Assembly (NCBI GenBank): GCA_051294905.1 | Contig: CM119382.1 | Coordinates: 10,602,001 to 10,666,000 of the forward strand | DNA from: Botryllus schlosseri | Taxonomy: Eukaryota | Direction: 5' to 3' | DNA length: 64,000 bases | Part shown: piece after piece, positions 374 through 38,800 of the stretch | Layout: each line of letters starts with the position of its first letter | Position numbering within the stretch: the stretch's first letter is position 1 | Notes under the pieces: model-generated | What the model was told of the DNA's origin: nothing | The model's input: the letters and a program-made list of their open reading frames with translations, nothing else | Database searches by the model: none | Translations under genes and position numbers: made by a program

Positions 374-525
374 TGTGGTATTGTGATGTGCATCATGTGA
401 ACCATTGCACAAAGTAGTGTATGGCGGCGGCCTTTGGTCGGGGGAGAGCTGTGGGGGAGTGTGCGCGTGCTATGTCAGTTGTCGTCGTTGTTTTCTGCTT
501 TTGAATGAATACATCTTCAATTACA
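374..525 (+). repeat. 5' LTR of element 1 (152 bp)
   Basis: Direct repeat of 3542-3702 with TG...CA ends. Confidence 0.93.
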
Positions 526-868
526 AGCTATCGCGGCCAAGATGGCAAACGTAAAGTTGACGGACATCGTTAAGAATTATGTGGATTGGGAGACGTCAGG
601 CGACTTTGCTAAATGGATAGAGAAATTGGAATTGGTTGCCGAACTGAAAAAGATGGAGTCTCTTGTGACTACATTACCGTTATTGCTCGAAGGCCCGGCA
701 TTTGCGGTGTATAAACAATTGTCCGAGGATATCAGAAAAGACTACGAACTGCTTAAAGGAGAAATGTTGGCAGCTTTTTGAGTGGATTGCTATGTGGCAT
801 ATGAACAGTTCCGTAACAGGGTACTTCAAGCGGGGGAATCAGTTGATGTATTCTTGTCTGATTTGAAG

Positions 869-1132
869 AGAGAGAGAGAGAGAGATATGATATTCTTTCT
901 CGCCTGCACCATCGAGATGCTTTGGCGACGGAGTTGCGATACGGCCCCATGAGGTCATCTAGTCTGCGCCCCCGTTTTTTTTTCTCCTCCATGCTATCCG
1001 TGATTGCTGAGCGCCTAGCAGGATAGCCGCGGATACCATTTTTCGAGTCTTTGGTATGACCCGGCCGGGGATCGAACCCACGACCTACCGCTCGAGAAGC
1101 CGGACGCATAACCATTACACTATCTCGCTCGG
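869..1132 (-). mobile_element. tRNA-derived SINE, copy 1, inserted in gag
   Basis: Minus strand shows A box TAGTGTAATGG, B box GGTTCGATCCC, body GGGTCATACCAAAGACTCGAAAAATGGTA (recalled as MetaSINE-like, not verified) and a (TC)n tail. It interrupts gag at DLKR|LETL. Confidence 0.88.
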
Positions 1133-1571
1133 AGGCTGGAAACGTTGATAGGGTTGAGCGGGGCTGCGGCAGAGCCAATAATCAAGTGTGCATTCGTTGC
1201 TGGTCTGCATGCGGATGTCAAGATACAGCTTAAGTCTGTCGCCGAGGCGGAGAAATTGGAGTTAAGTGCTATTGCAAAAAGGGCACGTATATTATTATCC
1301 ACAAGAGATGGTGAAAGTGTGTTCTGTGCGGCTGGGGCTCGACGTAGATTGGACGGCCCCTGTTTCAGGTGTCATAATGTGGGTCACATCGCCAGAGACT
1401 GCCCGAATGGAAATAATACTGGTGCTGTACGAACCCAAGGATTTTAGGACAGTGTCCAGCGGCAGTGCTTTGCATGGGGACGTATGGCCTGGCAATGTAG
1501 AGGATTGCCGGCTGCAGGAAAAGACCTAGGAGGGACGTTGGCACCGGACGTCCCCTCCGCATCGCACTAGG

Positions 1572-1831
1572 GGGAAGAGAGAGAGATATGATATTCTTTT
1601 TCGCCTGCACCATCGAGATGCTTTGACGACGGAGTTGCGATACGGCCCCATGAGGTCATCTAGTCTGCGCCCCCGTTTTTTTCTCCTCCATACTATCCGT
1701 GATTGCTGAGCGCCTAGCAGGATAGCTGCGGATACCAATTTTCGAGTCTTTGGTATGACCCGGCCGGGGATCGAACCCACGACCTACCGCTCGAGAAGCC
1801 GGACGCATAACCATTACACTATCTCGCTCGG
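1572..1831 (-). mobile_element. tRNA-derived SINE, copy 2, inserted at the gag/protease junction
   Basis: About 98% identical to 869-1132 (5 substitutions and a poly-T length change). TAGG is duplicated at 1568-1571 and 1832-1835. Confidence 0.88.
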
Positions 1832-3541
1832 TAGGTGCTACCATTTGTGCCTGTGGAGATTTGTGGCATTGTGACAAATGGTCTTGTTGACACTGGTTGT
1901 GAACAGTCAGTCATTCGTGAAGACTTGTGTAAGCAATTGGGTTTTACACTTAAAGGACCGTATAGAGTTGTAGAAATTTTAAATGGGGCACTCACTAATT
2001 ACCCAGGGAAGGTTCGGGCCAAGGTGACGATTGATGGTGTTGTAGAGACTGAGTTTTTAGTGGCTTCAGATTTAGTGTATGATGCAAAAATAGTTCTGGG
2101 GGACGATATGGTGAAAGCGCTTGGTGGCGTTGCAGTTGATGCTGAGCTCAACACGAAGTTTGGGCTTCAAGCGATCAAGACTGCATGTGCTTCGACGAAG
2201 GTGGTTTCAGAAAGTCAGCCAGTGGAAATAGTTGACTGCGACTACCAAGCTATGTTTGAAGGGGTGAAGTGGACTGAGAACGATGGCGAGGTGTGGAAAT
2301 GAAAGAGAGATGGAGAACTGCCTGTGGTGGCAGAAACCCTAACCAAAAGAGAGTTATTTTCAGTCTTTGGGAAGTTAATTGGACACTACCCAGTGGCTGG
2401 ATGGTTGAGAGGGGCATGCAGTTATGTGGAAAGACTGACCGACGAAGTTGAATGGGATGCAGTTGTTTCAGGACAAGTGAAGACTCTGGCCGAAGAGATT
2501 ATGGCCAAGGTGCGGAGACAAGATCCAGTCAGTGGGAGTTGGCGAATGTCTCCTGGTGGTCAGGTGGAAGTGTGGTGTGACGCGAGCAATCTGGCGGTAG
2601 GATGCTGCGTGAGAGTAAATGGTGCCGTTGTAGAAGACGCGGCGTGGATGCGGAAGCAGGATGATTTTATGCATATCAATGCTGCGGAGTTGGAAGCTGT
2701 AGTGAAAGGTCTAAGCATGGTGCTGAAGTGGAACATGAAGAACATTGAAGTGGTTACGGACTCGGCTAGTGTGTACAATTGGGTAAAGTCGATACTGGAA
2801 AACAGCCACAGACCAAAAGTGGGTGGGCTAAGCGAGATGATCACAAAACGTCGGTTGGGAACAATCTCGCAGCTCATTGAAGAGAATAGTCTCAAAGTGA
2901 CGATCCGTTTGGTTCCATCAGCCAAAAACATTGCTAACTACTTGACAAGGGTCCCGAAGACCTGGCTGCAGCAGGTGGCAGCATGTAAAGAGAGGATTTC
3001 TCTGAAATCGGGGAATGCGAGGCGTTTCACCCCATGGAGAGAGGGAACCGTGACAGAAATAGTTGCAGACGCTGCGGTAGAAGTGGATGGAAGGAACGAG
3101 CATGTTGCTGATGTCAAGCACATGGTGGGGAAGCGACGGAAGGTTGCTGGTAGTAGTAATGTTCCTTCAAGAACTGTGGAACTGGTGTTCGATGAGGAAA
3201 ATTTGGAGGATAACTGGAGGTATGACGAATTTGAACTGCTGGATGAACCTGAACCGCCTGATGACATCAGTCAAAGAGAAATGGTCTTCAACGAGGGGGG
3301 CAGGGAGTATTACAACCTTGAACCTCCTGATGAGAGTAATCAAACGTAGGATGCCGATCAAGAAGCTGAATGCTCTATTCGAGATCGGGCCCCGCCTAGA
3401 TGGTTGGCCGACTACTGTGTTGATTTATGATTGTCTGTTTTACCTTAGCTGGGGGGGTTCTATGTTTGCTTGCTTGGTTATGTTGCTGTCGTTGGGTCAC
3501 CATTGTAACTGTACGCTTATGATCTTTAGATCAGGGGGGAA

Positions 3542-3702
3542 TGTGGTATTGTGATGTGCATCATGTGAACCATTGCACAAAGTAGTGTATGGCGGCGGCC
3601 TTTGGTCGGGGGAGAAGCGGGAGAGCTGTGGGGGAGTGTGCACGTGCTATGTCAGTTATCGTCGTTGTTTTCTGCTTCTGAATGAATACATCTTCAATTA
3701 CA
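3542..3702 (+). repeat. 3' LTR of element 1 (161 bp)
   Basis: Direct repeat of 374-525 plus a 9-nt insertion; preceded by the PPT and followed by TSD ATATT. Confidence 0.93.
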
Positions 3703-4101
3703 ATATTAACTTATAGAATCTGGTTATGGTACCATATTAAGTCAAGGCCGCTACTTATCTGAATGCGAAATTATAAGATCTCCCGCTGCTGCGTTGACTG
3801 AAATATGATCTGCGTGCACATGATCCGTGTTGCCAATGTCGGAACTTGCTCTCAGTATTTAGAGGCGCGCCTACGAAGAGACGTACTCGGGCTGCTATCG
3901 ATCGCACCGTACGACATTGGTGGTATATTTTAATATAACAGGACTATGTATATGCGTATAGAGTTGTTAACACGAGCGAGATTATCTAATTCTTGTAGTA
4001 GAAGCATTTGTGCATACAATTAGCAAGATAAATAGGGTTTAAATCAGAACATCCTTTGTTGACGTAACACCCCCCTTTATTCTCGTCTGGCTACGCCCCT
4101 G

Positions 4102-8164: not shown

Positions 8165-8327
8165 TTTTAAATGACTAAAATATTGTTGCCGGAAGTACAA
8201 GTATCTTTGGCCATGCGGCATAAGAAAGATGTTGAATGTTTGCTGGCCCACGAGAGGATGAAATTTGAGTTGTAGTGGTAGCGCATAAACCTGTCGGTTG
8301 TTATTATGTTACTCATAGTGATTCGAC

Positions 8328-8481
8328 TGTCAAGATATCTGCTTATTTACAGCGGCGTTTATTATCAAAAGCACAAGCTCAGCTTTATTCAACGAATCCA
8401 CAATAACAATAATAAGCATCCGCCTCCAGCATGTGCCATCGCTGTAGCGAGTAGTCTCTCAGTATGGCTCATATCACTACA
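8328..8481 (-). repeat. 3' LTR of element 2
   Basis: Identical to 12017-12170 by eye. Confidence 0.96.
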
Positions 8482-8491
8482 TCCTCCTCTT

Positions 8492-11400
8492 TCAGTTTTC
8501 GTCATCGTCGATGTAGCGTTTCGGTTTGCGTACAGCTCGGCCGGATCTGGTAGTCTGTATGCTTGTGTTCAAGGCGCTTGAGGATGGTGTGCTGTCTTCT
8601 TGTTCTATCGGTATGGATGTGCTTGACGTGTCCACAACGTTTGTCAAGGTTTGCTCCGTGGCACATGTTTCCACATTTCTCAAGTAGGCCCGATTTCTGA
8701 CAAGCTGTCGTCCTGTTGCCATTTGTACCGTGTATCTTCGGTCACTTTCACGCGATAATATGGTCGCGAGCTTCCAAACTTTATCTTGTTTGTCCAGCAC
8801 CCGTACATTTTGTCCATGGTGCAGTAGTGGAAGTTCTTTAGTGTGCTGATCGGCGTATTTCTTCTGGTTTTCCACTATCCGGTCAACCTTGTCTCTGTAT
8901 ACCTGAGGTGTTGAGATGATATCATGAGTAGGCAGCTTCGTTGTGATGCGGCGGCCAAATAGCAGTTCAGCAGGGCTGGGCAGCACATTGTCGAGAGGTG
9001 TTGCCCGGACATTGAGTAACGCTGCCTGGATATCTCCTCCAGTCTTGATACATTTCTTGATGATAGGTTTGAGATATCCTATCTGTCTTTCGATGAAGCC
9101 ATTGGATCTGCTGTGTCGGGGTGAGCTGGTTGTGTGCGTGATGCCCCATTCATCACAGAATTTGTCGTATTGGCTGAGGTAACAAGGTCCACCGTCACTG
9201 ACTATTTCTTTGACGCTTCCAAATAAGCTCAGGATCCTTTTCGTTTTGTTGACGACGGATTTCGATGTGATCGATCATAATTCTTGCACGATGGGGTATC
9301 TGGAAAAGTAGTCTGAAATGATCAGAAAGTTCCTACCTTTGATCTCGAAAATGTCAGTTCCGAGTTTCACCCAAGGTCTTGGTGGGCGTTCATGCATCTT
9401 CATCGGTTGTTTTGTTTGTTCTGGTAGGAGCTCCTGGCATGATTCGCATGACTTGCAGAGTGTTGAAATGTCGTTGTTGATTCCAGGCCAATATACATAT
9501 TCCCTGGCAAGTCTTCTTGTCTTTTCGATGCCCTGGTGACTCTCATGCAGTTGTTGTAATATATCTGATCGCAGACATGTTGGAACGACTGTCTGATTTC
9601 CTTTGAATATTATGCCGTTTTCAAGGGCTAGCTCATCCCTGTAGTTCCAGTACTCTCGTATGTCCGAAGGTACCTCTTGAATCGTGTCGGGCCAACCAAT
9701 GTGTATGGTTTCGGCAACGGTTTTCAAGATCGGATCTGTGGCAGTTTGCTGTTGTATCTGCGATTGCTTCACACTTGAAAAACACAAGAAGTCAATGGGC
9801 ATATCACTTATGCAGCTGATAGGTACTGTGTTTGCACTGTGGTCGAGAGTTGCAGTCTCGTCTTTTTGGTTTGGTAGACGCGAGAGTGCATCAGCGAGCA
9901 CCATGCCGGGTCCAGGTCTATAGGATACCACAAAGTCGTAGCCTAGTGTTTGCGATATTATTCTCTGTAAGCGAGGGGGTGCACAGTATATCGGTTTTTT
10001 GAATATCATTTCAAGCGGTTTGTGGTCGGTAATGACCTTGAAGTGGCGGCCAAACAGATAATGGTGAAATCTTTTTATGCCATACAGAATTGCTAGGCAC
10101 TCTCGCTCAATATTACTGTAATTTGACTCACTTGGCGTCACAGCTTTGCTTGCGAAAGCGACCACTCGCTCACCTTGAACCAGCGAGCTTCCCAATCCTT
10201 TTAGCGATGCATCCACTTCCAGAGTGACCGGTGAAGTAGGATCGTAGTATTGCAGGATGTGGCTGTCAGTGATTGCTTTCTTGATCTGCTCAAAGGCGTG
10301 CTGGTGATCTTCATTCCAGAGATATGTTATATCCTTTTTGCAGAGGTCTCTCAATGACGCACTTGTTTTCGAAAAGTTTGGAATGTGACAGGCTAGGAAT
10401 TGTGCCATGCCTAAGAATGTTTGTAGGTCCTGCTTGTTTCGTGGTGTCGGCATGCCGGTTATGTCACTGACTTTTGTCGGGTCAGGTTTTACACCATGAT
10501 CAGTCAGGAGTCTTCCGAAGAACGAGATGCAGTTGGTCTTGATGCAACATTTCTTGGAATTGAGCATGAGACCCTCTTTTTTCGCAGTGTACAAGAAGTG
10601 TCTCAGTCGCCTGTCATGTTCGTCATTGTCTTTTCCGTGTATCACAATATCATCAGATATGCCAACACAACCTTCGCATTGGGCAATGATAGCATCCATT
10701 TTGGCTTGGAATATATCCTGTGATACATTGAGCCCGAATGGTAGGCGCAAGAAACAGTATTTGTCGCCAAGGGGGCTTCGAAATGTCGTCAGTTCTTGTG
10801 AGGCTGGTGATAACTTCACACTCCAGTATCCAGATTTAGCATCAAGCTTAGAAAATACTTTTGACTTGCTGAATTCTGGTAGGAGTTCTTCGACTGTAGG
10901 GATCTTGTGTGGATTTCTCTTCAGCGCTTCGTTAAGGCGTCTTGGATCAAGGCAGACTCGCAGTGTCTTATCTGCCTTCATTGCCACAGTGAGCGAAGAG
11001 CACCAGTCAGTATGTTTGGTGACTTTCCGTATAATCCCCAGGGTCTCCATCTTATCGAGATCTTGCTTGATTTGATCCTTAATATGGATTGGGCATTTCC
11101 GCGGAGCATCTTGGAACGGTTCTGCGTTCGTGTGTATGTGCAGAGTTTCTTCACCCTTAAAGTTGCCAATGCCATCAAAGCAGTCTGGAAAACATTTTTT
11201 CAGGTCCTCAATGGTATCCACTCTAGGCGGCGTCTGCTCTGTATGAGGAGCTTTGTCCATGACACTGCATGTGTCCAGATTCAGTGTAACAAGATTGAGT
11301 GCCTCGCAGGTGGGCAGGCCCAGGATGCCGGGACCGTCAGTGTCGACCACATAGAATTTATCCTTACGATACTTCTTGCCATGTGGCCGTTTGATGCGGA

Positions 11401-11905
11401 GACTTATCGATCCAAAGCACTCAATACACGAACCGGAGTAGTTCTTTAGCAAAACATTGGGTTCTGGTTGTAACGGGGTCGGATTGAATTTCCCGAATAT
11501 TTCCTTGAAAAGTCGTCTTGGAAGAGTGTTTGCTCCAGCTCCAGTGTCGACCTTGATCTTCCAGCTCCCAGTCAACTTTGGGTTCATATGCTTGAATTTA
11601 ATCCTGGTGTATGCTTCCTTACCCTGTTTGTTCTTGCAGTCGTTTACAGCTCCAATGGTGATCGATGAAATTGTGTTCGTTTGGTCATCATCACTATCGG
11701 GGTTTTGACAGTCGGTACTGCTGCTATCTGTGTCATACACTTTTACTTCTGATTGTCGAGTATGTCGACTCTTTTGATGTTTCGCTACAGCGATGGCACA
11801 TGCTGGAGGCGGATGCTTATTATTGTTATTGTGGATTCGTTGAATAAAGCTGAGCTTGTGCTTTTGATAATAAACGCCGCTGTAAATAAGCAGATATCTT
11901 GACAT
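8492..11905 (-). pseudogene. pol: pol (protease-RT-RNase H-integrase) with one premature TGA in the integrase core
   Basis: Protease KVDTGAGAN; RT LPFGLNVSQDIFQ and GISDDIVIHG; RNase H EVDASLKGLG, YSNIERECLA, TDHKPL; integrase HESH...CKSC and GTDIF. After TGA at 9277-9275 the same frame continues (VSDGGP, SNGFIER, SPAELLFGR) to the stop at 8492. Confidence 0.92.
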
Positions 11906-12139
11906 GGTGGCAGCAGTGGGATTCGAACCCACGCCATCGAAATGACTGGTCATTTCGATGGCGTCATTTCGATGGTCATTTCGATGGCGTGGGTTCGAAT
12001 CCCACTGCTGCCACCATGTCAAGATATCTGCTTATTTACAGCGGCGTTTATTATCAAAAGCACAAGCTCAGCTTTATTCAACGAATCCACAATAACAATA
12101 ATAAGCATCCGCCTCCAGCATGTGCCATCGCTGTAGCGA
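11782..12139. repeat. Perfect inverted repeat: 165-bp arms (123 bp LTR + 42 bp tRNA-Leu-derived) with a 28-bp spacer
   Basis: 11782-11946 is the exact reverse complement of 11975-12139. The ORF track gives identical peptides on both strands across it. Confidence 0.96.
11905..12016. other. Reverse-transcribed tRNA-Leu 3' part (variable arm, T arm, acceptor strand, CCA) in both orientations; not a tRNA gene
   Basis: CCAGTCATTTCGATGGCGTGGGTTCGAATCCCACTGCTGCCACCA contains a GTCAT-TTCG-ATGGC variable arm, a GTGGG/CCCAC T stem with TTCGAAT loop, discriminator A and CCA. D arm and anticodon are absent. Confidence 0.9.
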
Positions 12140-12170
12140 GTAGTCTCTCAGTATGGCTCATATCACTACA
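12017..12170 (-). repeat. 5' LTR of element 2
   Basis: Identical to 8328-8481; followed on the minus strand by the PBS. Confidence 0.96.
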
Positions 12171-15100
12171 TCGACTACTATGGTCAATTTGTTATATTTA
12201 CTCCAGGCCGATATTTCTATCATGATCCCTGATCTGCCAACACGGTTCATCTCCCTAGGCTACTGATTTGCATGACAGCGCTTACGCGGATCACCTGGCG
12301 AGGACGAGCCTAGATAAACCCGAATCACGAATTCTGGAGTCGGACTCGCAGCTTGTTGGTCGTTGCGGCTGTGGAGTATACCACGGCGCTATTTCGCAAC
12401 TACGTAAAGTCATCGGCATTAGTACAATACAATGTTCTATATATTTGCAGTCAAGGTCAAGGGTAGCCAGAAAAAATGAGGGGGGCAGAAAATTGATGAG
12501 GTCAAAGACGCCCTCCTTTTGTTGAGGTAAAAAAAAAATTACAAATGGCTCATGACAAAAACTTCGAGGGTAGCCGCAACTCAATTGCGGTAATCGTTTT
12601 AAGCAGTGTTTGGCAACACAATCATACTAACAGAATAGGAAGCTCCCCCTATCTAAAACTATATCAACGACGAAATCCATATTCCCAGTTTCCCACAGCC
12701 TGACAACATATATTCGGGTCGAATTAGGAATATCTTGATTCTATGGGATATCCCTGAGGTCGAACGATCGAACAATATTCATGATTATTACAACAGGCTG
12801 CCAACGAAAACAACTGCTGTGCTGTGTCTAATGTCTAATATAAGTTTACCATTGTAGCCTGTGTCGTGTATTGCAAGTTCACGCAATATATATGAAGAGG
12901 TCAGCACATAAAACTGTTGAACTATTGGATCAAGGATGTTGTAATCGAGGCTCGCGTCATAGCTTGGTAGGAACTAATTGCATCATTAGTGTATTTATAA
13001 TTTGGTTGATGACAACGATAGCTACGAAACTTATGTGTCGTGTCATAAACTTCGGGTAATTGTCAGCACTGTCTATCTGTATCTGATAGCTGTCAATGTT
13101 ACCAGCGTAACCTATTGCCATCGTATATAATATTCAATGATATCAATATTGACAATAGACAATCTAACAAATTTTCTAACTCGTGTTACATAACTCGCTA
13201 CTACTTGGGCCTAATATGTAGTAGCTAGCCTACTTGGGTGCGAAAACAAACACGTAACATGCGCTGGTGTAGTTCCTCAACTATTCAAGTAGTAAGCGAA
13301 TTGTCACAGCCAAATCTAGCCTGTAAAGCACACTGTAAAAAATCTGGTAGATTTACTGGGAAATCTCTGTAAATTTTACCACAAATTACCGGTCGCAGCC
13401 AATTACTGTGCGTAGCTTGTCATTTTACATTTTGATATGTAATATTACCTTAATATAGCTGTAAAGTAAGTTACCAGAATTTCTTCGCAAAATTACTGAC
13501 AGTTACTCGTTACTGCAGTTTACAGGGCTATTGGCAAAATTGATTAGCTTCAAAATCGCTGCAGCCAATGTATACGTAAAACTGAATGTTACTGATATAT
13601 CATTCTATAGAGGTGATTTGACCTGATTGAACCTCGTTTGCGAGACTGGGGTCTGTCATACCGAAATTGTTGGCCCTAGTATCAATTTAAGCTTAGTAGG
13701 GTACAAGAAATAACTGACGATCGTAGCTAATGTGGTACACCGTAGCCATATTATATTATAAGGCTATGGCTGTACGGCCAGTCTCGCTGGTTACATTCGT
13801 TGTCACGGATAAGGCTGATAAGTTAGAAAATTAGTTCAGGATGTATAATATTGCTCGGGGAAACTAGAAATATCAGCACCGCATGCTCAGCTAACCATTT
13901 GTTAATGGCGGACAAGGCGACCTGTAATAGGTTACATTAGGTGACTGCTTTTTCTGAGATTCGTAGTAAACAACCAACGCACAACTGTGACATCACAAGC
14001 AGCGTCTGGTTAGGTAAGTACAGTAAGTAGTGAACAATACATGGAATATACATCAATTTATACGAAATTAGATGAAAAAAGGGACTATATGCAATGATAA
14101 ATGTTTCTGTATGGAAAAAACGACCCAGATCAAACATTATACGTGGCCAGTAAATATTATTGGTGTCATGTGTCAGCGGATGAATACCATTTATTTCGAA
14201 ATCGTTCGAGTGTCGTCTGGCCAGTGGCCATTAGTGAGGTTTGAGCAAAGGGTGGAGCGAAGCTTGTGCTTGAAGAAAGTGAACACGATCGTTGAAGATT
14301 CCTAGGAATGCTGAATGGCATACGCATCTTAAAAGGTAATACAGTACTACATAGTATTTGTTACCGTGAATATCTGACTCTGCACACCAGCCCTCGATGA
14401 CTTAGATTTCATGATTGATATATTTCATTCGCCGCATTCTCTGTTCTATTTTTGGATATTTGTCGACTTATATAGTGACCACATACTCCGCTGCGGAGGA
14501 GTTGAAACTGTTGGCTTGGTAATGTCATTTTCGGGCCATAGCATAGATTTGTTTTCATCCACTGCTGGATTTGTTTGCCACACATGCCACCTTAAATTAG
14601 GAACCTTTTGCTTCAATACAGAGATAAAGTCATGAATCTCTGCTATGTCATGTAAAAGGCGGAGCCGTCATCACACAATGTGCCAGTACCGGTACTTCAA
14701 AACATGTTATATTTTTGTTAGCCTATTTGTCTTAGTCTTTATAATGTCATGTCCACTGTCCAGGTTAGGAACTTTGCTTTATATAGCTACTTACGCACGA
14801 ATTCTTTTTAGTGGAACTGCAAGATACTACTTAAACAGAAGGAATGAGAACGAGAAAAAGAAACAATTGGAAGTTTGGCCGGTGGTGGAATTAATTCACG
14901 TTTTCTTGAGACCACTCGTGTTACTGCATGTCTCCTAAAGAAGAATTAGACCTCCAGCAGCAATATTTTTCCATCGATAACCACTTCATCGTGATATCAT
15001 GAATGAATATACAGTTTATTCCAATGTCGTTTTGTGGATGTGAAGAAAATGTTGCGATATTTTTGCATCGGGTTGCTTTGCGATAGGTATAGATGTACGT

Positions 15101-26800: not shown

Positions 26801-29800
26801 AAGCAAGCACGGCGACAAGAAAGACAAGCATGCCGGTACGATAATTTCTGTTAACGATCCCGGATTTTTTTATTGAATTTTTATTTCTATTTTTATCCGG
26901 GAATAATCCAGATGACGAAAGCACCTATTCTCGCTCGTCTCGTTCGTCGTCTCGATCCGAAGAATCCAGAAAATCCGAACGCCGCAGTAAAAAATCAGAG
27001 TAAGCCCAAAAGCAATTGTTCTTATCCTTAACATATGGGGTCCATGGGCCCATTGGTGGACCGCAGACTAGTTTTAAGGGCTCCAGGAAACGCCAATGTT
27101 GAAACTACAACTGCAGACTAGGCAACTAACTGCATTATCCTTGTTTGACAAGATCTGTCCTTATTTATGACGTATATCCATATTTTGTCTTATTCTCAGT
27201 GCTGGCCGCAATAACCACACCGACAATATAAATCATGCGATCACTAATAATTGCACTCCAAACGGTATTCAGGCCACGACGAGGGCTGTAATGAGATTTC
27301 CTAAAAGATATTTAGTCGTCAGTTGGTTTTTTGTTTGGATGGCAATAAAGCTGGGATTAGGATTGGGACTTGGCGACATTGATGACATTTTTTATTTAGT
27401 TATCAGCTGTTCAAATTTTGCGGTTAGGCCACTCAAACTTTCAGATGGGAAGATTAGGCTATCTTGGACTAGTAGGCGTGGTCGAAATTCAAATAGAGAT
27501 AGACGGAACGTCGTAAATGTCGACTTGGATTACAGATAGAAGTAACAATTTCATGGCAATTTCCAAATGAGAAAGTAAGTATTGTAATCTTAGTAAATAG
27601 AAGTAAAGTAAGTACAAAAGTGTGTGTTCTATTTAACACTGAAACTGACCCGATTATTTGAAATTTCAAGCCGGTGACGTAATATTTTGTGATACGATTG
27701 TTGATGTACAATGTTCTTTCCAATTCTCTACTAGTTGCTAACAATTAACCCTGACGAGTGTCAGCCGAAAATATTTGGCTTTATTTCAATACCAATTCTA
27801 ATTGTAAGAAGTGGTTGTCTAAAATCATAGTCACTTTAGCAAGTAGGAAAAACCTACCTGGAGTAGCCTACTTCGTTACTGACAACCTCCTGGCCCAAAA
27901 AATTAGAGGCCCGGCTAGGAACCCCCATCCTAAAGTACGATGGTTGAATATGCGATGACGTTGAATATGCACGTCTGTTTCAGAAAACCAGTTCAGAAAG
28001 AGCCGGAGCCAGAGAAAAAAGACAGGAAAGCAGTCGGCGGCATACGCGTGATGCCGGCCGAGCTGGAGGCGGCCACCAAAGCGAAAAAGGCGGCGGACAC
28101 GCCGTCCGGTTCCAGTCGCACCAGCTCTCGGGTCAGCCACACCCCGGAACCGGCGCCGCGCGCCAAATCCTCGCAGCCCCTCTACGACGAGCCCCCCGAA
28201 GACGAGGTGGAGGAGGACGGACAAGTTCTACCGTACGTTTTTCTAAATGATTTTTGAAACAAATATGACGTTCTTTAGAACAAATTGAACGTTCTTACCA
28301 ATTCTCTACTACTTGCTGACGTTTACCCCCTCGGTTTCATTTCAATATGAGAACAAAGTAATGTAGTGTACGATTATAAGTGCCACTGTGATTGTGGCTA
28401 CGTGGGAAGAACGTCAAAGCGTCTGCAGGAACGCGTAAACCAGCATGTCCCCAGATGTATCAGAACACGTGCATCAGGCTCGGTGAAAAGCTCCACCTTA
28501 AAACTCATCCGCTTAAGCTTGATGCTGACCGATCAAAGGCCATTAATTCTGTGCCATCGGCAAACATCTGTTCGATGATCCAATTTGTGCGAATAATTAT
28601 CGAGATGACAGATTTCACGTTGTTGGGAGGGGCCGTTCGCGCTTCCATTTGTGTGCCTTGGAGTCGACTTTTATCAAAATACACCAACCCAAACTCTGTC
28701 AACAAAAGGAGTTCGTGTCCCACCTAAAAATAGTACATTGAACGCTCCCTCTTTCATGCTGGTGACGTCATATTTTGTGATGCAATTGTTGATATACAAT
28801 GTTCTTTCCAATTCTCTAATAGTTGCTGACGATTTCTCCTGACGAGTGTCAGCCGAAAATATTCGGGTTGATTTCAATACGAATGTACTATCCCATTGTA
28901 TATTGAAGTTCTGTACCTCCAAGAAGCTCTTCAAGTATTTCAATATAAATATACTTTTCAATAATTTTTGTAACAAACATTAGTTCTGCCATGTTGTTTT
29001 GTGAAAAATTTTTTTTCGAAATTTGCTTTTGACGGTGGCCATATTATTTCCAGCGCAAACGCTCACACCATCAAATTCATCAAGAAGCGCAGCGTTGGGA
29101 TAAGATTGGCCGGCGGTAACGATGTCGGGATATTTGTAGCGTCGGTTTTGGATACGAGCGCCGCTGCCCTTCAGGGATTGAAAGCCGGCGATCAAATCTT
29201 GAGCGTAAGTGGACTGGGTTACGTTTCATCGGCGATGTAACGGTTTGTTTTGATGCGCATAGGTCAACAATAAAAATTTCCGGAATATTATACGGGAAGA
29301 AGCGGTTTTGGCGCTGATGGGATTACCGGAAGGGCAGGAGGTGACGATTGTGGCGCAGCCCAGATTCGCAGGTACGAATTTCTGATTCCGCATTATTGAA
29401 GAGGTACTGTGCACTAAATAATATGTTGTGTTCTCAAATTAATGTTGAATTTGTGACAATCGTTTTGGCATCAGCCGTTATCCTCAGAAAGTCGCCGTAA
29501 TTCAACTGTAGCTAAAAGATTTTCACAGAATGTATCATTCCAATCTAACTATCTCTGTGATGTCACTCGTTATCAATTTTTAATTCTTTGCAAAATTTCT
29601 GGCACGCATTTTCTCGACGTGATCAAGGCAGAAAATGTATTTTTGATAGTTGTCGGCCGATATTATGGAACAACTGTGTCGTATGAACCACGGGGGTTTG
29701 GGTACGGTACTGAGGCGTTCAGCCAGGTATATTTGTGTTTGAAGCTTGTTATCGGTACAGGTACCTACCATTTTTCAGTTTCTCTGCCTTGAACTGCATC

Positions 29801-32800
29801 AGACTGTAAATCCTTTGAATTAACACATTGCTGGCTGAACTTTTACTTGGTTGTATTTGAAATGTAGATTGGTACATCTAGAAACTGTGATGGTATGCCA
29901 GCGATTGCTTTAATAATATTATTGCTCCTTTACGTGATAGTTTCTTTCGATATGATTTGCTCAAGTTAATATGAAACAGCGTCTGTATGCTACGATTTTG
30001 TTTAGTTATCTGGGTTAGGGTCAACTTGCTTATCGGCAAGTGCAAACTATGTATTTTGATGACTTGTGTTTCGCTATGTAGTAAGTTTCGAGTGGGCAGA
30101 GGCGCGTTTGTTTAATTTGCTCTCTCGCGATAGCGTCGTAAACAGACTCGACTTTCTGACGTCTGTAGCGCTGTTTGAGGAGAAAATATGTTCCAGCGAT
30201 AGATTCACTTCCTTATTTGTCATTCTTTCTGTACCTGCCTAAATTGAAACTAGATTCGCCGTTGATCATGTGATTGAGTTGTGAGTCATGGCGCTGTCAT
30301 CTTTACACTCCTACAAATGATTGATTTTTTCAGTGTAGTGTCACAATGATGGCAATGTCATGTTTCTTAAAATCTGTATTTCTCTTTTGTGGCAACATGT
30401 ATTAAAATTCCCTGGTGCCTGTGCGGTGGGTGGGGCCCACATTGTCAAATACCATTATATTATTTTCGTAGGCCAGTTCATATTAAGCGCATTCTTCCAA
30501 TATGACATATGAGGAAGTGGTGTAAGTAATGTTATAATATTCTTATGCAATATTGTTATAATATTCCTACACAATTCTGTTGGTTTGGTATGGTACATCA
30601 CTTCTGTGTTCCTTAGCTCCTCTTGATGATCGCTCATGCCTGAATGCTTTCAAAGGCCGCACTTCCATTTATGCTCAATTCATCTTTTGATATCAATCAA
30701 TCACGTTCACTCTACATTATTTCGGGTGGCGCGAGCAATTTGTTTTATCTTGACTTCAAGATTGACTTTACATCGTAAATCTATCTCTGCCTTGGAATTT
30801 TTTCTTTCCATATTTGGAAGTACCTTGACTATTCGTCTGTGAAGAAATGGGGAATCTAGCAATGTATGAGACACAGCGTCACAGTCTAATATTTATGATT
30901 TCAGGGATATCGAGAACTCCTACAACTTATATATATCCCTGTTGTGATCAATGACGTAACTACCAATATCGGTAATTGGGATTTTTCCATCCCATGTTAG
31001 AAGACGACTCTCATCCACTGAACTGATGTCTATTTTGTACTCAATTAGATGCTCATAATGCTTTGTTGTGTATATCTTTTCTGGGTCATTTGGCATAATA
31101 ATCAATTGATTGATTGATTGATTGATTACCGTTACTTGATTAGTTTACATTCTACTTACACAAATGAACGAAATAACATTAAGGAAATGCCGAAAAAGTC
31201 TGACTTGATACTTGTAATAAGCATTTTTTGCACTCAATTTGTATTTTGCATGCCATATACTTCTTGTCCCCGTAAATATCACACCGTTTATATGTGCAGC
31301 GCACAGTATGAGAATGAGAAAGCGTGCTTGTTATCTGGTGCTTACATTCATAATGCAAGGTGTACTTAATTTGAGCGTGCTCCGTTACTTTTTAGAGTTT
31401 CAAAAGACTCTAGATCACGGCACCGGCGACTCCTTCTACATCCGTACTCATTTCAAATACGAACGGGCCAACGAGCACGAAATGAGTTTCAAACAGGGAT
31501 CCGTCTTCCGCATATCCGACACTCTCTATCAAGGGATGGTCGGTTATTGGCTCGCTGTGCGCATCGGCAGAAGCAATATGGAAGTTGAACGCGGGGTTAT
31601 TCCCAACGGCAGTCGGTAAGATTACGAATCTTTCTTTCTGCAAGCAGTTTATCGAAGCTGATGTTAAAGGCACACTTTGCATGGGTTCGCGGAAGAAAAA
31701 ATCAATGTTTTCCTTCAATATATAAATTAAACTTTTGTTGCGGTCGGAGATTCCTGCCGAAATGGATTCGAAATACACTTTAATGGACCGTTGCTCCCCC
31801 GCCGTTGCGTAGAATGTTATGGTTCGATTCCGCGGACGAGCTATAAATTGCATTTTGTAATTGAAATTCTGTGAGGCAACTTGCGGATATGGTGATTTGA
31901 GTGCTGTATTATTAATGAGGATGGCTGTGTCTTTATTATGATTCACTTTAATACCTTGACGGGATGGAATTTGCTGAAATTTTGGTCAGCGGTGCGTATT
32001 TTTTCCCACTGGAGCCTTGAGAGTACATATGGTTCTACCGTATGATTTAAAATATGTAGCAACATATTGTGACATTTGACCACTAGAACTTTCTGGTTTT
32101 TGAATAATATATCCTATTCAGCTTTAAGTATTTACAATCAAACTCTAACTGAGTAAGAAACAAGGTGTATATTGTAGTCGAGAAAATGCAACTAAGAATG
32201 TGAAGTCGTGTGGTTCTCATAAATCAATACATACGACAGTATTCGAGACCCTCTCACATTTGTAGCAGTGATGATGCAGTTGGACAGGTCAATAAATATC
32301 GACTGGAGTTGACTGATATTGATATATTGCCACTGGCACTTTCGGCTAGCTTACACATCGGTCATTCTCGCGGTCTCTACTTGAATGGTTAATCATGAGA
32401 TTAAAACTCTGAAATCGAATCACCCTGGTCCTTGATTTTGCCCAGCCCTCGTCGGTATCGAAATGAGACACGGTGAAACACGATACGGTATGTTTTCGTC
32501 TGCAGCGCGCAGCAGTTGAAAGAAGTGCAGGACAAGAAAATGCAGCAGTCTAAAGAGAAGGCGACGCAACGTGGCGGAATCAAGAGGCGACTGAAGGGAA
32601 ACGCGGGGAAAGGCAAGCCGGAAAAGAGCTTCCAAGCTCCGGCAAACTCTCCCCACTTCCCCGCCTATGAGAGAGTGGTGTTACGTGAAGGTATGTGGAT
32701 TACGTTGTGGAATTGGTAACCTTGAAGCTAGAACCGATAACATTTTCGATCGCTCTACTCCTTGAATAAGCCGCTGTCCATAATCTAGAGATTATTTTGG

Positions 32801-35800: not shown

Positions 35801-38800
35801 GACCTTGAAGAAGTGGCCGCGTCGCCGGCTAGAAAGCCGCCTGCGGGCGGGGTAGCTTTAGTACCGCCCCCGAAGGTAAGCGTTTTAAAATCTTAATTCT
35901 GAACGAATCTTGGAAATCCCATAACCCAGTCAGTCAGATCAACAACGAGCATGGATTTGATTTTAAATCAAACTTATTTGATGATTTTAACCTCATCTGG
36001 ATTGCTTATGGATATATAATTGATATCGAGTTCGATTGTACTAGTTGCTGACGATTACCCCTGACGAGTGTCAGCCAGAAATATTGTGATTTATTTCAAT
36101 TTTATGAATATACTATTCAATTATATATTGAAGTTCTGTACCTCCGGATTATGATTTGAACGTGAAATTTCTAATCATTTTCAATTTTCAAGCAAATTTT
36201 AAGCAAAGTTCACGTATTGCCCCAATTCGGACATAATTTGATAGTAATCCAGTATTTTGCCTGGGATTTAATCTCGATCTGATACAGGATTTGTAATTGG
36301 AAATATTGGTATCTCAATCTAAAACAGGCGTCTCAAACTCTTGTTTGTCTGCAGGCTAGTTTCCTAGTTTGTGATGACGCCGCGGCATCAATAATAAGGG
36401 TATTCAATGTCTTTCCGAGCAGGCCTTATTTGATGGGACCTTGCGGAATGAAATTCCACACCCATCGATAAAATGTGGTTTGCTATGTAGCGATTCACGC
36501 ATGGTATGAAACATATCACATTTTTAAAAATAGAAATAAAATGTTCTTTGCGCACTTGCTTTCGACGCGGGCTGTACAAAATATTCTAGTTTGCGAACCC
36601 TGATCTAAAACAAGACGGTCCTTTGGAGTCGCAATTTATTTCTATTCGCTGCAATATCTGTTTGAATGTAGCGTCCGCCGAGCAGCTCCAGCTCTGAAGA
36701 GGAAGAGGCCGGGAATAAATTTGGTGATGACGATCTGGACGATGCCCTGAATAACGAGGAGGAGGAAGAACCGCCTCACGTGAAGCCCGTACTCCCTCCG
36801 ACCAAACAAGATTGTAAGTTTTCGAAGCCATTGACAGCTTTCAGTGGTATCTTGAGATGATTTTCAAATCAATTCAGATCCGTCGTCTGCTTCATCTCCA
36901 CGCGGCATGGACAGATCAGCGCGCCCGCAGGTAGGCCTGTTTTTACGTCGTAACGTGTCCGAGTAGCTCACCAGCGGTGCGTTTCAGCATGACGACACGT
37001 CCAGCACCAGCTCGGAAGAGCCTCGTCAGCCGGCCCCCAAAGTCACCCCGTCCTACACGCCGACAAAGAGCTCGGAAGCTTTGGCGCGGGCCGTACAGCC
37101 CGTGCCGGACGGTCGGTTCGACCCGGATTCGTTTTTAAAGTGAGTTCCGTGCCGGGCTGTCAATTCGGTTCATGTTACATTTTTAGTTCCCATATTGTTA
37201 TTATCTAAAAATAATACTTTGAACGGTCTCGTATTCGAAATTTCATGCTGGTGACGTCACATTTTGTGATACGATCGTTGATACACGATGTTCTTTTCCG
37301 TTCTCTTCTAGTTGCTGACGATTACCCCTGACGAGTGTCAGCCGAAAAAGCCGAGTTCATTTCAATATGAATATACTATTCAATTGTATTTAGAAGTTCT
37401 GTACCTTCAAGAGGCTCTTCAAATATTATTACCAAATGAATCATTATCAAAACGAATTGCTTTTGCGCAGGTTGGCCTACGTGACGAGACAGTAACGGCA
37501 GCTTTTAGTAACATTTGAGAACATTCGGTTTAATTTTAATGTAGTCGTAGACTCGTAGTAGAGCATTTTAAGTAATATTTATAATAACTTAAATGTAATA
37601 TAAAAGCATATTATTGTCCAAGTAGATACACAGGAATGTTATTATTATTACCAAGTGAATCAAACCTATTTTTAACTACAAAAAAAAGAAATTATACTCG
37701 CAGTAAGAAGCAAGTTTGTGAAGGTGCTCACTGCTACCACATGAAAAACTTAAATTGTTAACAAACTCCTTGTATCTCCAACTCTTGAATTCAAAGAATG
37801 TTACAAAACTTCCCGTGTCTCCCGAGGCCATCCAGAGAAGATGCAATGATACACCGACTCCGCAGCCCTGGTTTCGTATCGCTATAGCCCAGTTTTTAAC
37901 GACTTTCTTCTTTCTTTTGTGCCAGGAATCATATCAAGCGTTTGAACAAAGTCCGAACCGACCCGGGCCCGCCTCCAGAGGCTGCAGAACCACCCTCACC
38001 TCAGCCGGTCCCGCAGCCTGCGATAACGCCGCAGCGGGCCCCGGAAACGGAAAGCGCAAATCGCTATCAACCTGAGTATCGGCCTGATGCCAGGTAATTG
38101 AACCGTATCTTGCCAGAGGATGGGGAGTACTCATCGTTGGTACTCGTAGAAGTGACTTCGTAAATTATTATCAAGAATAGATAGAAATAGCCATCAGGCC
38201 GGTCATAAGGAATATAGTTTGACACAGACGAAGCAGCCACTTTCCAGAGCTCTAAATATCACATTTTTCACTGTCCAAAGTTACCCCGTTCTGATAAAAT
38301 TTGACGGGGTAACTTCGGACATCACATTTTCTTGTATTGATCTAAGGGTGAGCCCACTGAGATTTTTGCCATGGATTTTAAGACTACTTAGAGATATCTG
38401 CTGCCAAGTTTTGAATCTATGAATCACATACTATCTATGTTTGGTTGTAAGAATTTTCATGGCCATCAATTTTGATGAAATAGATCGGCGCCATAAATTT
38501 ATCATGTCAGGTCAAGTTTATCTGGTAGTGAAATGAATCCGCCTTTTATTGAGACTACTTGTGGTACTGTTGCATCATGAAAAAGAATTGGACATCCAGC
38601 AGCAACCCTTTTCCATCAATAACCATTTAAATCTTTTACTGCTTAGTGTCCAAAGTTACCCCGGTTTACGGTATTTTTCGTTTCCAGACGTGACCCGCGA
38701 CCTTCAGAACCATTATACGCTCAAGTAGATAAAAACAGGTAATTATATTCAATCGTAAATATTCCGTCGGTCGGGTTTTGAATCTGTCGCATTTCCCTGT

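What the first reader, a model, noticed from the sequence alone, without database searches (positions are those of the whole stretch)
11782..12139. Built-in 165-bp perfect hairpin at the 5' end of a retrotransposon: candidate 'killer' allele against its own family
Seen: read on the element strand, the 5' LTR, extended PBS, 28-nt spacer, tRNA-Leu 3' end and antisense copy of 123 nt of LTR form a flawless inverted repeat. A transcript from the 5' LTR would fold into long dsRNA. One arm sequesters the PBS and U5; the other is identical to the tRNA primer plus minus-strand strong-stop sequence. Established: an inverted-duplication derivative (maize Mu killer) silences its family through hairpin small RNAs, and 3' tRNA fragments inhibit LTR elements at the PBS. 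Inference: this locus could yield siRNAs against every family LTR plus CCA-ending tRF-like RNAs against tRNA-Leu PBSs, combining both defences. I know of no described LTR element with this architecture.
Basis: partly seen in the sequence, partly recalled or inferred. Interest (0 to 1): 0.88.

Follow-up and report, generated by a model that had tools for sequence, protein, structure and literature searches.

The report
Retrotransposon with reverse-transcription scar hairpin
The perfect 165-bp hairpin is real, but it is best read as a scar of faulty reverse transcription in a young, gag-less, dead retrotransposon copy (its tRNA primer and first DNA product were copied in backwards), not as an evolved anti-transposon device; it could yield silencing RNAs if transcribed, which is untested.

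Summary
Arms 11782-11946 and 11975-12139 are 165 nt, 100% complementary, with a 28-nt spacer.

The host element lies on the minus strand at 8328-12170 (3843 bp). It has identical 154-nt TG..CA LTRs, a 5-bp target duplication (GTCGA), a polypurine tract and a Ty3/gypsy pol (PR-RT-RNaseH-IN).

It is defective. The leader and about 270 codons of gag are missing, because the inverted arm abuts the pre-protease sequence at 11781/11782. Integrase carries one in-frame stop at 9275-9277.

The inverted arm is 46 nt of mature tRNA-Leu (positions 39-76 including CCA) joined to antisense LTR nt 32-154. That is the structure of minus-strand strong-stop DNA still attached to its primer. The spacer consists of stuttered extra copies of the tRNA variable arm. 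Three relatives have ordinary 10-12-nt tRNA-Leu primer binding sites followed by leader and gag.

Best reading: an aberrant cDNA made in a single retrotransposition event, then integrated normally. It is related to the tRNA-insert/deletion proviruses described for HIV-1, but with an inverted strong-stop segment.

The "killer allele" idea is physically possible (RNA fold -342 kcal/mol) but has no evidence here. No other family copy, transcript or small RNA could be examined.

Novelty: new variant of a known kind. Interest is moderate.

The parts
12171..12175 (-). Target-site duplication, 5' side (GTCGA on the element strand)
   Evidence: Identical to 8323-8327 (alignment)
12017..12170 (-). 5' LTR, 154 nt, TG..CA, complete
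   Evidence: 100% identical to 8328-8481
12140..12170 (-). LTR nt 1-31, the only part of the LTR not in the palindrome; inferred U3
   Evidence: The arm ends at 12139. Calling it U3 is an inference from the strong-stop model.
11975..12139 (-). Right arm on the element strand: LTR nt 32-154 (inferred R-U5, 12139->12017) plus a 42-nt complement of the tRNA-Leu 3' end (PBS and read-through, 12016->11975)
11947..11974 (.). 28-nt spacer. Plus-strand copies of the 13-nt variable-arm motif GTCATTTCGATGG start inside it at 11949 and 11963, and a third starts at 11975. The 2-nt true centre TG is at 11947-11948.
   Evidence: the DNA search finds 4 copies against 0.16 expected; sequence
11905..11950 (-). 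46 nt in tRNA-Leu sense (positions 39-76 with CCA): end of anticodon stem, variable arm, T arm, acceptor 3' strand, discriminator, CCA
   Evidence: tRNA-Leu genes read ...ACCAGTC[variable arm]GGCGTGGGTTCGAATCCCACTGCTGCCA. BLAST of those genes reaches 11950 on this arm. Exact 46-mer check.
11782..11904 (-). Antisense copy of LTR nt 32-154 on the element strand, joined to the tRNA CCA. With the tRNA piece it has the structure of minus-strand strong-stop DNA.
   Evidence: 100% identical to LTR nt 32-154 ([I5], 54)
11781..11782 (-). Deletion junction: the inverted LTR copy abuts pre-protease coding sequence; leader and about 270 codons of gag are absent
   Evidence: Window pol aligns from residue 270 of the 1384-aa relative P0001. 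tblastn of six full-length relatives finds nothing for their first 127 (N-truncated P0002) to 293 residues. N-termini of relatives are gag-like, with weak Pfam hits.
9278..11781 (-). pol: aspartic protease (DTGAGA), RT, RNase H, integrase zinc finger and the start of the integrase core
   Evidence: Pfam RVT_1, RT_RNaseH_2, RT_RNaseH, Integrase_H2C2; 57% identity to P0001
9275..9277 (-). In-frame stop codon inside the integrase core
   Evidence: Frame-0 translation; the ORF ends here
8495..9274 (-). Rest of integrase in the same frame, running to its natural stop at 8492-8494 next to the PPT
   Evidence: tblastn alignment continues to 8507
8482..8492 (-). Polypurine tract AAAGAGGAGGA
8328..8481 (-). 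3' LTR, 154 nt
8323..8327 (-). Target-site duplication, 3' side (GTCGA)

Best explanation
This is a young, dead-on-arrival insertion of a Ty3/gypsy retrotransposon. It belongs to the "K02A2.6-like" lineage, which has a single gag-pol ORF, LTRs of about 150 nt and a tRNA-Leu primer. Its 5' end carries a scar of aberrant reverse transcription.

Shown:
- The element integrated normally, with complete identical LTRs and a 5-bp target duplication.
- Between the 5' LTR/PBS and protease, the leader and gag are replaced by an inverted block. On the element strand that block reads as 46 nt of mature tRNA-Leu (with CCA, back to anticodon-stem position 39) joined to antisense U5-R. This is the structure of minus-strand strong-stop DNA (-sssDNA) still carrying its primer.

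Inferred order of events:
1. A growing minus strand stopped in the gag/protease region, for example at a break in the RNA. It jumped to the 3' end of a free -sssDNA from the co-packaged genome.
2. It copied that DNA (R-U5) and ran on into the tRNA primer, past the usual stop at position 58. It halted within 1-3 nt of where a block at modified G37 would stop it.
3. It turned round inside the self-complementary variable arm, stuttering twice, and copied back along PBS-U5-R.
4. The 5' LTR was completed on plus-strand strong-stop DNA, the plus strand copied the whole product, and integrase inserted it.

The hairpin is therefore a by-product and not an adaptation.

Consequences (inferred): the copy cannot make gag or full integrase. 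Its PBS would be locked in a 165-bp stem in any transcript. If the intact 5' LTR fires, the first 358 nt of the RNA would be a perfect long dsRNA, which is a plausible Dicer substrate. A 165-bp near-perfect DNA palindrome is also expected to be fragile.
For: - The palindrome is exact.
- The element has identical 154-nt LTRs, TSD GTCGA, a PPT and a length of 3843 bp.
- Pol is Ty3/gypsy.
- Gag and leader are absent. Relatives align only from residues 128 (N-truncated P0002) to 294 onward, and no gag match exists anywhere in the window. N-termini of relatives are gag-like.
- The tRNA is tRNA-Leu(TAG/AAG). All those genes read ACCAGTC before the variable arm. The window matches this on the left arm only, to 11950. 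So the left arm holds 46 tRNA nt and the right arm 42, and the 2-nt centre (TG on the plus strand) continues the tRNA copy. This means the plus strand was synthesised first through the centre, primed from antisense protease.
- An unrelated contig, L020, carries LTR-end + 44 nt of the same tRNA-Leu complement with the same variable arm. This confirms the host tRNA sequence and shows that read-through to the anticodon stem recurs.
- Relatives L002, L025 and L026 have PBSs of only 10-12 nt, followed by leader and gag.
- The variable-arm motif is present 4 times at the centre.
- Precedent: HIV-1 defective proviruses with 7-54 nt tRNA(Lys3) inserts at deletion junctions, and junctions at the 5' end of R (PMC12657518). 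m1A58 and m5Um54 act as RT stops whose loss allows read-through (PMC8599865).
Against: - No intact copy of this family was available (best protein relatives 57-62% identical). The deleted sequence, the microhomology at 11781/11782 and the family's normal PBS length are therefore unknown.
- The transcription start is not mapped. The model requires it at or within about 2 nt of LTR nt 32 (window 12139), which leaves a U3 of only 31 nt. The base there (T after C) is not a typical initiator purine.
- The preference for "minus strand first" rests on only 2 unambiguous nucleotides (TG at 11947-11948), plus support from L020.
- The exact stutter steps cannot be reconstructed.
- Assembly correctness cannot be checked from the window.
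Confidence: 0.7

Rival explanations
1. Same general origin, different strand. Plus-strand strong-stop DNA read through the tRNA primer (deferred second-strand transfer). It snapped back in the variable arm, copied itself for 165 nt, then switched at an arbitrary point (LTR nt 32) to minus-strand DNA at protease, deleting leader and gag.
For: tRNA read-through followed by a jump to a downstream site on the minus strand is the mechanism proposed for HIV-1 proviruses with tRNA inserts (PMC12657518). It needs only one cDNA molecule. The right arm is contiguous with the complete 5' LTR.
Against: On the element strand the PBS-sense copy stops at 42 nt and is followed by stutter units. The central dinucleotide then reads CA, in tRNA sense, and not TG as a continued plus-strand copy of the tRNA would give. 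A snap-back strand cannot contain tRNA bases that its own template arm lacks. The arm end at LTR nt 32 would be a coincidence. The product would be a heteroduplex with a normal minus strand.
Confidence: 0.18
2. The hairpin is a functional, selected feature: a "killer" locus. Its LTR-driven transcript is diced into siRNAs against every family LTR, and into tRF-like RNAs against tRNA-Leu PBSs.
For: The 5' LTR is complete and identical to the 3' LTR. The predicted RNA stem is perfect and very stable. Inverted TE duplications can silence a family (Mu killer), and LTR hairpins are discussed as silencing triggers (PMC11624286). This function is compatible with an accidental origin.
Against: There are no transcript, small-RNA or population data. 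No other family copy is in the window or in the databases searched, so a target population is not shown. The arms and LTRs are 100% identical, so the insertion is too young to show any sign of selection. Nothing in a continuous stem positions a cut after CCA. Regulatory sequence in the deleted leader may be needed for expression.
Confidence: 0.1
3. Post-integration DNA rearrangement. A normal insertion later suffered a replication fold-back/template switch (FoSTeS/MMBIR type) at its PBS region, duplicating 165 bp in inverse orientation and deleting about 1.2 kb.
For: Hairpin-prone sequence (the T-arm and variable-arm complements) could stall a fork. Two template switches would suffice.
Against: It requires the original insertion to have already carried at least 46 nt of tRNA sequence, whereas relatives carry 10-12 nt. 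The longer tRNA copy sits on the inverted arm, not on the arm attached to the intact LTR. That is the opposite of what copying from the original 5' end predicts. The tRNA stretch includes CCA contiguous with the T and variable arms, which indicates a mature tRNA template.
Confidence: 0.05
4. Assembly or sequencing artefact (fold-back chimeric reads, missed adapter, polymerase template switch).
For: Perfect palindromes are a known artefact class. No read-level evidence is available here.
Against: - Artefactual fold-backs have arbitrary centres, and their arms continue into inverted flanks. Here the arms stop after 165 nt, with different, meaningful sequence on each side (U3 plus target duplication on one side, protease on the other).
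- The centre lies in tRNA sequence that relatives' elements do not encode.
- The spacer is asymmetric, with stutter copies.
- The whole element is bounded by a clean target duplication.
Confidence: 0.05

Closest known systems
Defective HIV-1 proviruses from "deferred second-strand transfer" (tRNA(Lys3) insert at a deletion junction; Hardy et al. 2025, PMC12657518)
   Same: Intact LTR and PBS, followed by tRNA primer sequence beyond the normal 18 nt (7-54 nt there, 42-46 nt here). A large 5' internal deletion follows. Origin lies in reverse-transcriptase read-through of the usual tRNA stop sites.
   Different: Here the tRNA stretch is present in both orientations, and an inverted U5-R (strong-stop) segment lies between the tRNA and the deletion junction, making a 165-bp perfect palindrome. 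This one is a germline insertion of an invertebrate-type Ty3/gypsy element with a tRNA-Leu primer. That paper's text contains no occurrence of "inverted" or "inversion".
Maize Mu killer (inverted partial duplication of MuDR that silences the Mutator family through hairpin-derived siRNAs)
   Same: A rearranged, non-autonomous derivative of a transposon that contains an inverted duplication of the element's terminal or promoter-proximal region and could be transcribed into a long hairpin.
   Different: Mu killer derives from a DNA transposon by a DNA-level rearrangement, is transcribed from a flanking gene, forms a hairpin of about 4 kb, and has demonstrated genetics and siRNAs (PMC3440606 abstract). 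Here the element is an LTR retrotransposon, the inverted repeat was made by reverse transcriptase, the stem is 165 bp, and no activity has been shown.
LTR hairpins from nested or tandem antisense insertions (e.g. EVD in Arabidopsis, PMC11624286)
   Same: Two LTR copies in opposite orientation within one transcription unit, proposed as a source of LTR siRNAs.
   Different: Those arise from two integration events kilobases apart. Here a single cDNA carries the inverted LTR part 28 nt from its partner.
Self-priming of minus-strand strong-stop DNA (HIV-1 TAR fold-back) and Tf1 self-priming
   Same: Fold-back of a retroelement's own 5'-terminal sequences during reverse transcription.
   Different: -sssDNA self-priming would give a palindrome centred on the 5' end of R. 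Tf1 uses 11 nt of its RNA 5' end as primer. Here the centre is in the tRNA variable arm. (Comparison from established knowledge, not tested here.)

Membership tests
Ty3/gypsy (Metaviridae) LTR retrotransposon | Direct LTRs ending TG..CA, flanked by a target-site duplication | tested here: met
   154-nt LTRs, 100% identical, with 5-bp GTCGA on both sides
Ty3/gypsy (Metaviridae) LTR retrotransposon | tRNA primer binding site next to the 5' LTR and a polypurine tract next to the 3' LTR | tested here: met
   TGGTGGCAGCAG... begins immediately after the LTR, and AAAGAGGAGGA precedes the 3' LTR. Relatives share the tRNA-Leu PBS.
Ty3/gypsy (Metaviridae) LTR retrotransposon | pol domain order PR-RT-RNaseH-IN | tested here: met
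   DTGAGA motif, RVT_1, RT_RNaseH_2 and Integrase_H2C2 in that order. Integrase is interrupted by one stop.
Ty3/gypsy (Metaviridae) LTR retrotransposon | gag (autonomous member) | tested here: not met
   No match in the window to the first 127 (N-truncated P0002) to 293 residues of six relatives. This is a defective derivative, not an autonomous member.
Mu killer-type hairpin silencer locus | Inverted duplication of element sequence within one potential transcription unit | tested here: met
   165-nt perfect inverted repeat downstream of LTR nt 31
Mu killer-type hairpin silencer locus | Transcription through both arms and production of siRNAs | not testable with these tools
   No RNA or small-RNA data are available for this genome
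Mu killer-type hairpin silencer locus | Heritable trans-silencing of active family members | not testable with these tools
   No other family copy in the window and none in the protein databases. No genetics available.
tRNA-insert/deletion defective provirus (deferred plus-strand transfer) | tRNA primer sequence beyond the 18-nt PBS contiguous with U5-PBS | tested here: met
   42 nt on the LTR-proximal arm and 46 nt on the inverted arm
tRNA-insert/deletion defective provirus (deferred plus-strand transfer) | Deletion junction directly at the end of the tRNA insert | tested here: not met
   Stutter units, an inverted tRNA copy and inverted U5-R lie between the tRNA insert and the junction at 11781/11782
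tRNA gene | Complete cloverleaf with D arm and anticodon arm | tested here: not met
   ARAGORN finds no tRNA in the window. The single Rfam tRNA hit (30.5 bits against a 29-bit threshold, 11908-12012) pairs the two palindrome arms as a false acceptor stem. Only positions 39-76 are present.
Source of 3' tRNA fragments (CCA-ending tRFs that target PBSs) | Release of 18-22-nt RNAs ending exactly at CCA | not testable with these tools
   In the predicted RNA the CCA is internal to a continuous stem, 123 nt from its base. No feature that would position a cut there was seen.

The most novel reading that the evidence does not exclude
A single reverse-transcription accident created, in one step, an LTR-driven perfect 165-bp hairpin covering R-U5 and the PBS. 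The locus is transcribed and diced and silences its own family in trans. That would make it an animal LTR-retrotransposon counterpart of maize Mu killer, and a concrete route by which de novo silencing of a newly active family can start.
Probability: 0.1. Interest if true: 0.85.

Novelty: new variant of a known kind. Interest (0 to 1): 0.5.

Why it matters
The locus is a rare molecular fossil of a reverse-transcription intermediate. It preserves minus-strand strong-stop DNA together with 46 nt of its tRNA primer.

From sequence alone it gives:
- the primer identity (tRNA-Leu, TAG/AAG type);
- a predicted R-U5 length (123 nt) and transcription start (LTR nt 32);
- the point where the element's reverse transcriptase stopped on the tRNA (the anticodon stem, near position 37).

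It extends the recently described class of tRNA-insert/deletion proviruses to a palindromic form in a germline retrotransposon. It also shows one way in which an LTR hairpin can arise in a single event. If small-RNA data exist for this species, it offers a clean test of whether such accidents seed family-wide silencing. Independently of that, a 165-bp perfect palindrome is a candidate fragile site.

Tried and rejected
1. Other copies of the family.
- An LTR probe in the window found only the two LTRs and the arm.
- Protein searches with pol and with the protease region alone, which allows short fragments, gave nothing above 62% identity.
- So the intact 5' region, the deletion junction partner and the copy number could not be obtained.
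- Two of six contig look-ups returned no DNA, and L001 showed no LTR pair.

2. Organism. The contig accession prefix JAAUXV gave no paper. The host was not identified; relatives are from tunicates, echinoderms and other marine invertebrates.

3. Rfam at a permissive threshold gave only generic long-hairpin hits (thermometer, miRNA precursors, tmRNA T-arm). These were dismissed as consequences of the palindrome.

4. DNA fold of the nascent strand end showed only the T-arm-complement hairpin and no convincing snap-back stem. The exact turn-round step stays unresolved.

5. Considered and rejected:
- Autointegration. The joins are at U5-PBS continuity, not at LTR tips.
- A 2-LTR circle junction. 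The arrangement is tail-to-tail with tRNA in between, not U5|U3.
- Classical -sssDNA self-priming. Its palindrome would centre on R, not on the tRNA.
- A DIRS-like inverted-LTR element. Integrase and a target duplication are present.

6. Literature searches for an already described inverted strong-stop/tRNA palindrome in an LTR element found none. The library lacks most subscription-journal papers, so this is not proof of absence.

Full report
**1. The observation**

The inverted repeat exists exactly as described. Its arms are 11782-11946 and 11975-12139, 165 nt long and 100% complementary, with 28 nt between them. It is far beyond chance. A 45-nt probe from the arm occurs three times in the window against 0 expected. 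RNA from 12139 down to 11700 folds at -342 kcal/mol, z = -38.7 against dinucleotide shuffles.

**2. The element around it**

The element lies on the minus strand.
- A 156-nt direct repeat (8328-8483 and 12017-12172) is 100% identical.
- Trimmed to TG..CA, the LTRs are 154 nt (8328-8481 and 12017-12170).
- A polypurine tract (AAAGAGGAGGA) precedes the 3' LTR.
- The same 5 bp (GTCGA) flank both ends.
- The whole insertion is only 3843 bp.

Its long minus-strand frame carries an aspartic protease motif, RVT_1, RT_RNaseH_2/RT_RNaseH and the integrase H2C2 zinc finger. The frame continues to 8495, next to the polypurine tract, with a single in-frame stop at 9275-9277 inside the integrase core.

The nearest proteins are 57-62% identical "K02A2.6-like" gag-pol polyproteins of about 1350 aa. 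They come from tunicate, echinoderm and other invertebrate assemblies.

The window's protein aligns to the best of these only from its residue 270. tblastn of six full-length relatives finds no match anywhere in the window for their first 127 (N-truncated P0002) to 293 residues. Those N-termini give weak Retrotrans_gag hits. So leader and gag are missing, and the inverted arm ends at 11782 directly against pre-protease coding sequence at 11781.

**3. What the arms are made of**

On the element strand the order is:
1. LTR (12170->12017).
2. A 42-nt complement of a tRNA 3' end (12016->11975).
3. The spacer.
4. The same tRNA stretch in tRNA sense.
5. LTR nt 154->32 in antisense (11904->11782).

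*tRNA identity.* A scan of metagenome contigs with the T-arm/acceptor motif returned 22 loci. ARAGORN calls a gene in 16 of them, and at each such match it is tRNA-Leu(TAG) or tRNA-Leu(AAG). All these genes read ...GGCACCAGTC, then the variable arm, then GGCGTGGGTTCGAATCCCACTGCTGCCA.

*Extent of the tRNA copy.* The window's minus strand from 11950 to 11905 reads ACCAG, TCATTTCGATGG, C, T arm, acceptor strand, A, CCA. This is 46 nt, equal to tRNA positions 39-76 of a long-variable-arm tRNA with the post-transcriptional CCA.

*Asymmetry between the arms.* BLAST of the tRNA genes against the window reaches 11950 on the left arm but only about 11980-11986 on the right arm. The left arm therefore carries more tRNA (46 nt) than the right arm (42 nt). 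The 2-nt centre (TG on the plus strand) is the continuation of a copy of the tRNA.

*The spacer.* It is not random. The 13-nt variable-arm motif occurs four times at the centre, once inverted and three times direct (0.16 expected). This indicates stuttering in a self-complementary template.

**4. Independent support and normal relatives**

Locus L020 is a 1067-bp contig of a different element. It shows an LTR end, one G, and then 44 nt identical to window 11905-11948, followed by unrelated sequence and no palindrome. This confirms that a tRNA-Leu with this variable arm, preceded by CAG, exists in nature. It also shows that read-through of this tRNA to the anticodon stem has happened more than once.

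Three relatives of the window's element (L002, L025, L026) have LTRs of 145-212 nt, TG..CA ends and PBSs of only 10-12 nt (TGGTGGCAGC(GG)), followed by leader and gag. The long tRNA stretch and the palindrome are therefore not lineage features.

**5. Origin**

A tRNA 3' segment that includes CCA, joined through that CCA to antisense U5-R, is by definition the structure of minus-strand strong-stop DNA with its primer. This is established retroviral and LTR-element replication.

Three points place the rearrangement in the cDNA, before integration:
- The product has complete LTRs and a clean target duplication.
- The three LTR copies are identical over 123 nt.
- tRNA sequence beyond the PBS cannot come from the element.

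My preferred sequence of events is inferred, not shown:
1. A growing minus strand stopped in the gag/protease region.
2. It jumped to the 3' end of a free strong-stop DNA from the co-packaged genome.
3. It copied R-U5 and 46 nt of the attached tRNA. It halted within 1-3 nt of where a block at G37 would stop it (1-methyl-G37 in tRNA-Leu is from general knowledge).
4. It turned round in the variable-arm hairpin with two stutters, and copied back.
5. The LTR was completed on plus-strand strong-stop DNA.

This explains four things: why the arm ends at LTR nt 32 (the predicted RNA 5' end), why the longer tRNA copy is on the protease-proximal arm, why the LTR-proximal arm continues into a full LTR, and why the product is a perfect duplex.

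The main rival is plus-strand read-through followed by snap-back. It fits the mechanism proposed for HIV-1 proviruses with tRNA(Lys3) inserts of 7-54 nt at deletion junctions (PMC12657518; stop sites in PMC8599865). It does not explain the orientation of the central dinucleotide or the arm end. I put about 0.85 on "reverse-transcription scar" in general and about 0.5 on the specific order of events.

**6. Artefact and DNA-level rivals**

A fold-back read artefact would have an arbitrary centre, and its arms would continue into inverted flanks. Here the arms stop after 165 nt with different, meaningful sequence on each side, and the centre lies in tRNA sequence. A misassembly is therefore unlikely (about 0.05), but only reads can settle it.

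A post-integration fold-back would need a pre-existing 46-nt tRNA stretch. It also predicts the longer copy on the wrong arm (about 0.05).

**7. Function**

The copy is non-autonomous (no gag, stop in integrase). Its PBS would be buried in the stem, so it is unlikely to propagate.

It has precedents in principle (Mu killer; LTR hairpins discussed for EVD, PMC11624286). Here, however, nothing shows transcription, small RNAs or even the existence of other family copies. With 100% identical arms and LTRs, the insertion is too young for selection to be visible.

The added claim of CCA-ending tRF-like products lacks a structural basis, because the CCA is internal to a continuous stem.

I rate the silencing function at about 0.1.

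**8. Novelty**

tRNA read-through inserts with deletions are described, and hairpin-forming TE rearrangements are described. I found no description of an integrated LTR element carrying an inverted strong-stop/tRNA block as a perfect palindrome. The library searched is incomplete.

I class it as a new variant of a known kind, of moderate interest. It is a neat fossil of a replication intermediate and a testable candidate hairpin locus, not a demonstrated defence device.

Noticed in passing
L020:1-69 (contig JAAUXV010293136.1): An unrelated contig starts with an LTR-like end (..CCTTGTTACA), one G, and then 44 nt perfectly complementary to the same tRNA-Leu 3' end with the same variable arm. Unrelated sequence follows, with no palindrome. 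This is a second, independent case of tRNA primer read-through fixed in a genome, possibly from a taxon close to the window's host.
   Followed up: partly
window 11897-11905 (minus strand): The join of the tRNA CCA to the antisense LTR end creates GCCACCATG, a consensus-like start context. The ATG at 11905 is in frame with protease-RT-RNaseH-integrase: 876 codons up to the stop at 9275-9277, of which the first ~41 residues are encoded by antisense LTR. This is probably fortuitous, and the ATG would be buried in the stem.
   Followed up: partly
window 11908-12012 (minus strand): This is the only Rfam hit above the gathering threshold in the whole window, a tRNA match (30.5 bits against 29). It arises because the two palindrome arms mimic an acceptor stem around a real T arm. 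ARAGORN finds no tRNA gene in the window.
   Followed up: yes
window ~442-3703 (plus strand): A second, degenerate LTR-type element. It has 85-nt terminal repeats 96% identical (442-526 and 3619-3703), an aspartic-protease ORF (1835-2299) and an ORF with DUF7047 plus RNase H-like domains (2324-3346). No RT domain was detected in the two ORFs scanned. It looks internally deleted.
   Followed up: partly
window 58500-59138, with related copies at 56520-56837: A larger but imperfect palindrome: 313-nt arms, 90% complementary, 13-nt spacer. Its arms are also repeated about 2 kb upstream in direct and inverted orientation. It may be a fold-back or MITE-like repeat, unrelated to the LTR element.
   Followed up: no
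window 31239-31616 (plus strand): An ORF with a variant SH3 domain (SH3_2, E = 1e-5), possibly a host exon. It was the only non-transposon protein signal among the ORFs scanned.
   Followed up: no
window 27664-27796, 28752-28937, 37241-37425, 48334-48422: A dispersed repeat family of about 90-130 nt at 74-88% identity. One inverted copy lies near 56371-56451. It was not characterised.
   Followed up: no
window 12131-12141 (LTR nt 30-40); L002 ~3653-3663; L026 ~2179-2184: Relatives' LTRs share a loosely conserved motif at the same distance from the LTR start: ACTCGCTACAGC in the window, ACTGCTGTAGC in L002 and ATCGCT in L026. It coincides with the end of the palindrome arm and is compatible with a start-site element there. 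This was judged by eye only.
   Followed up: partly
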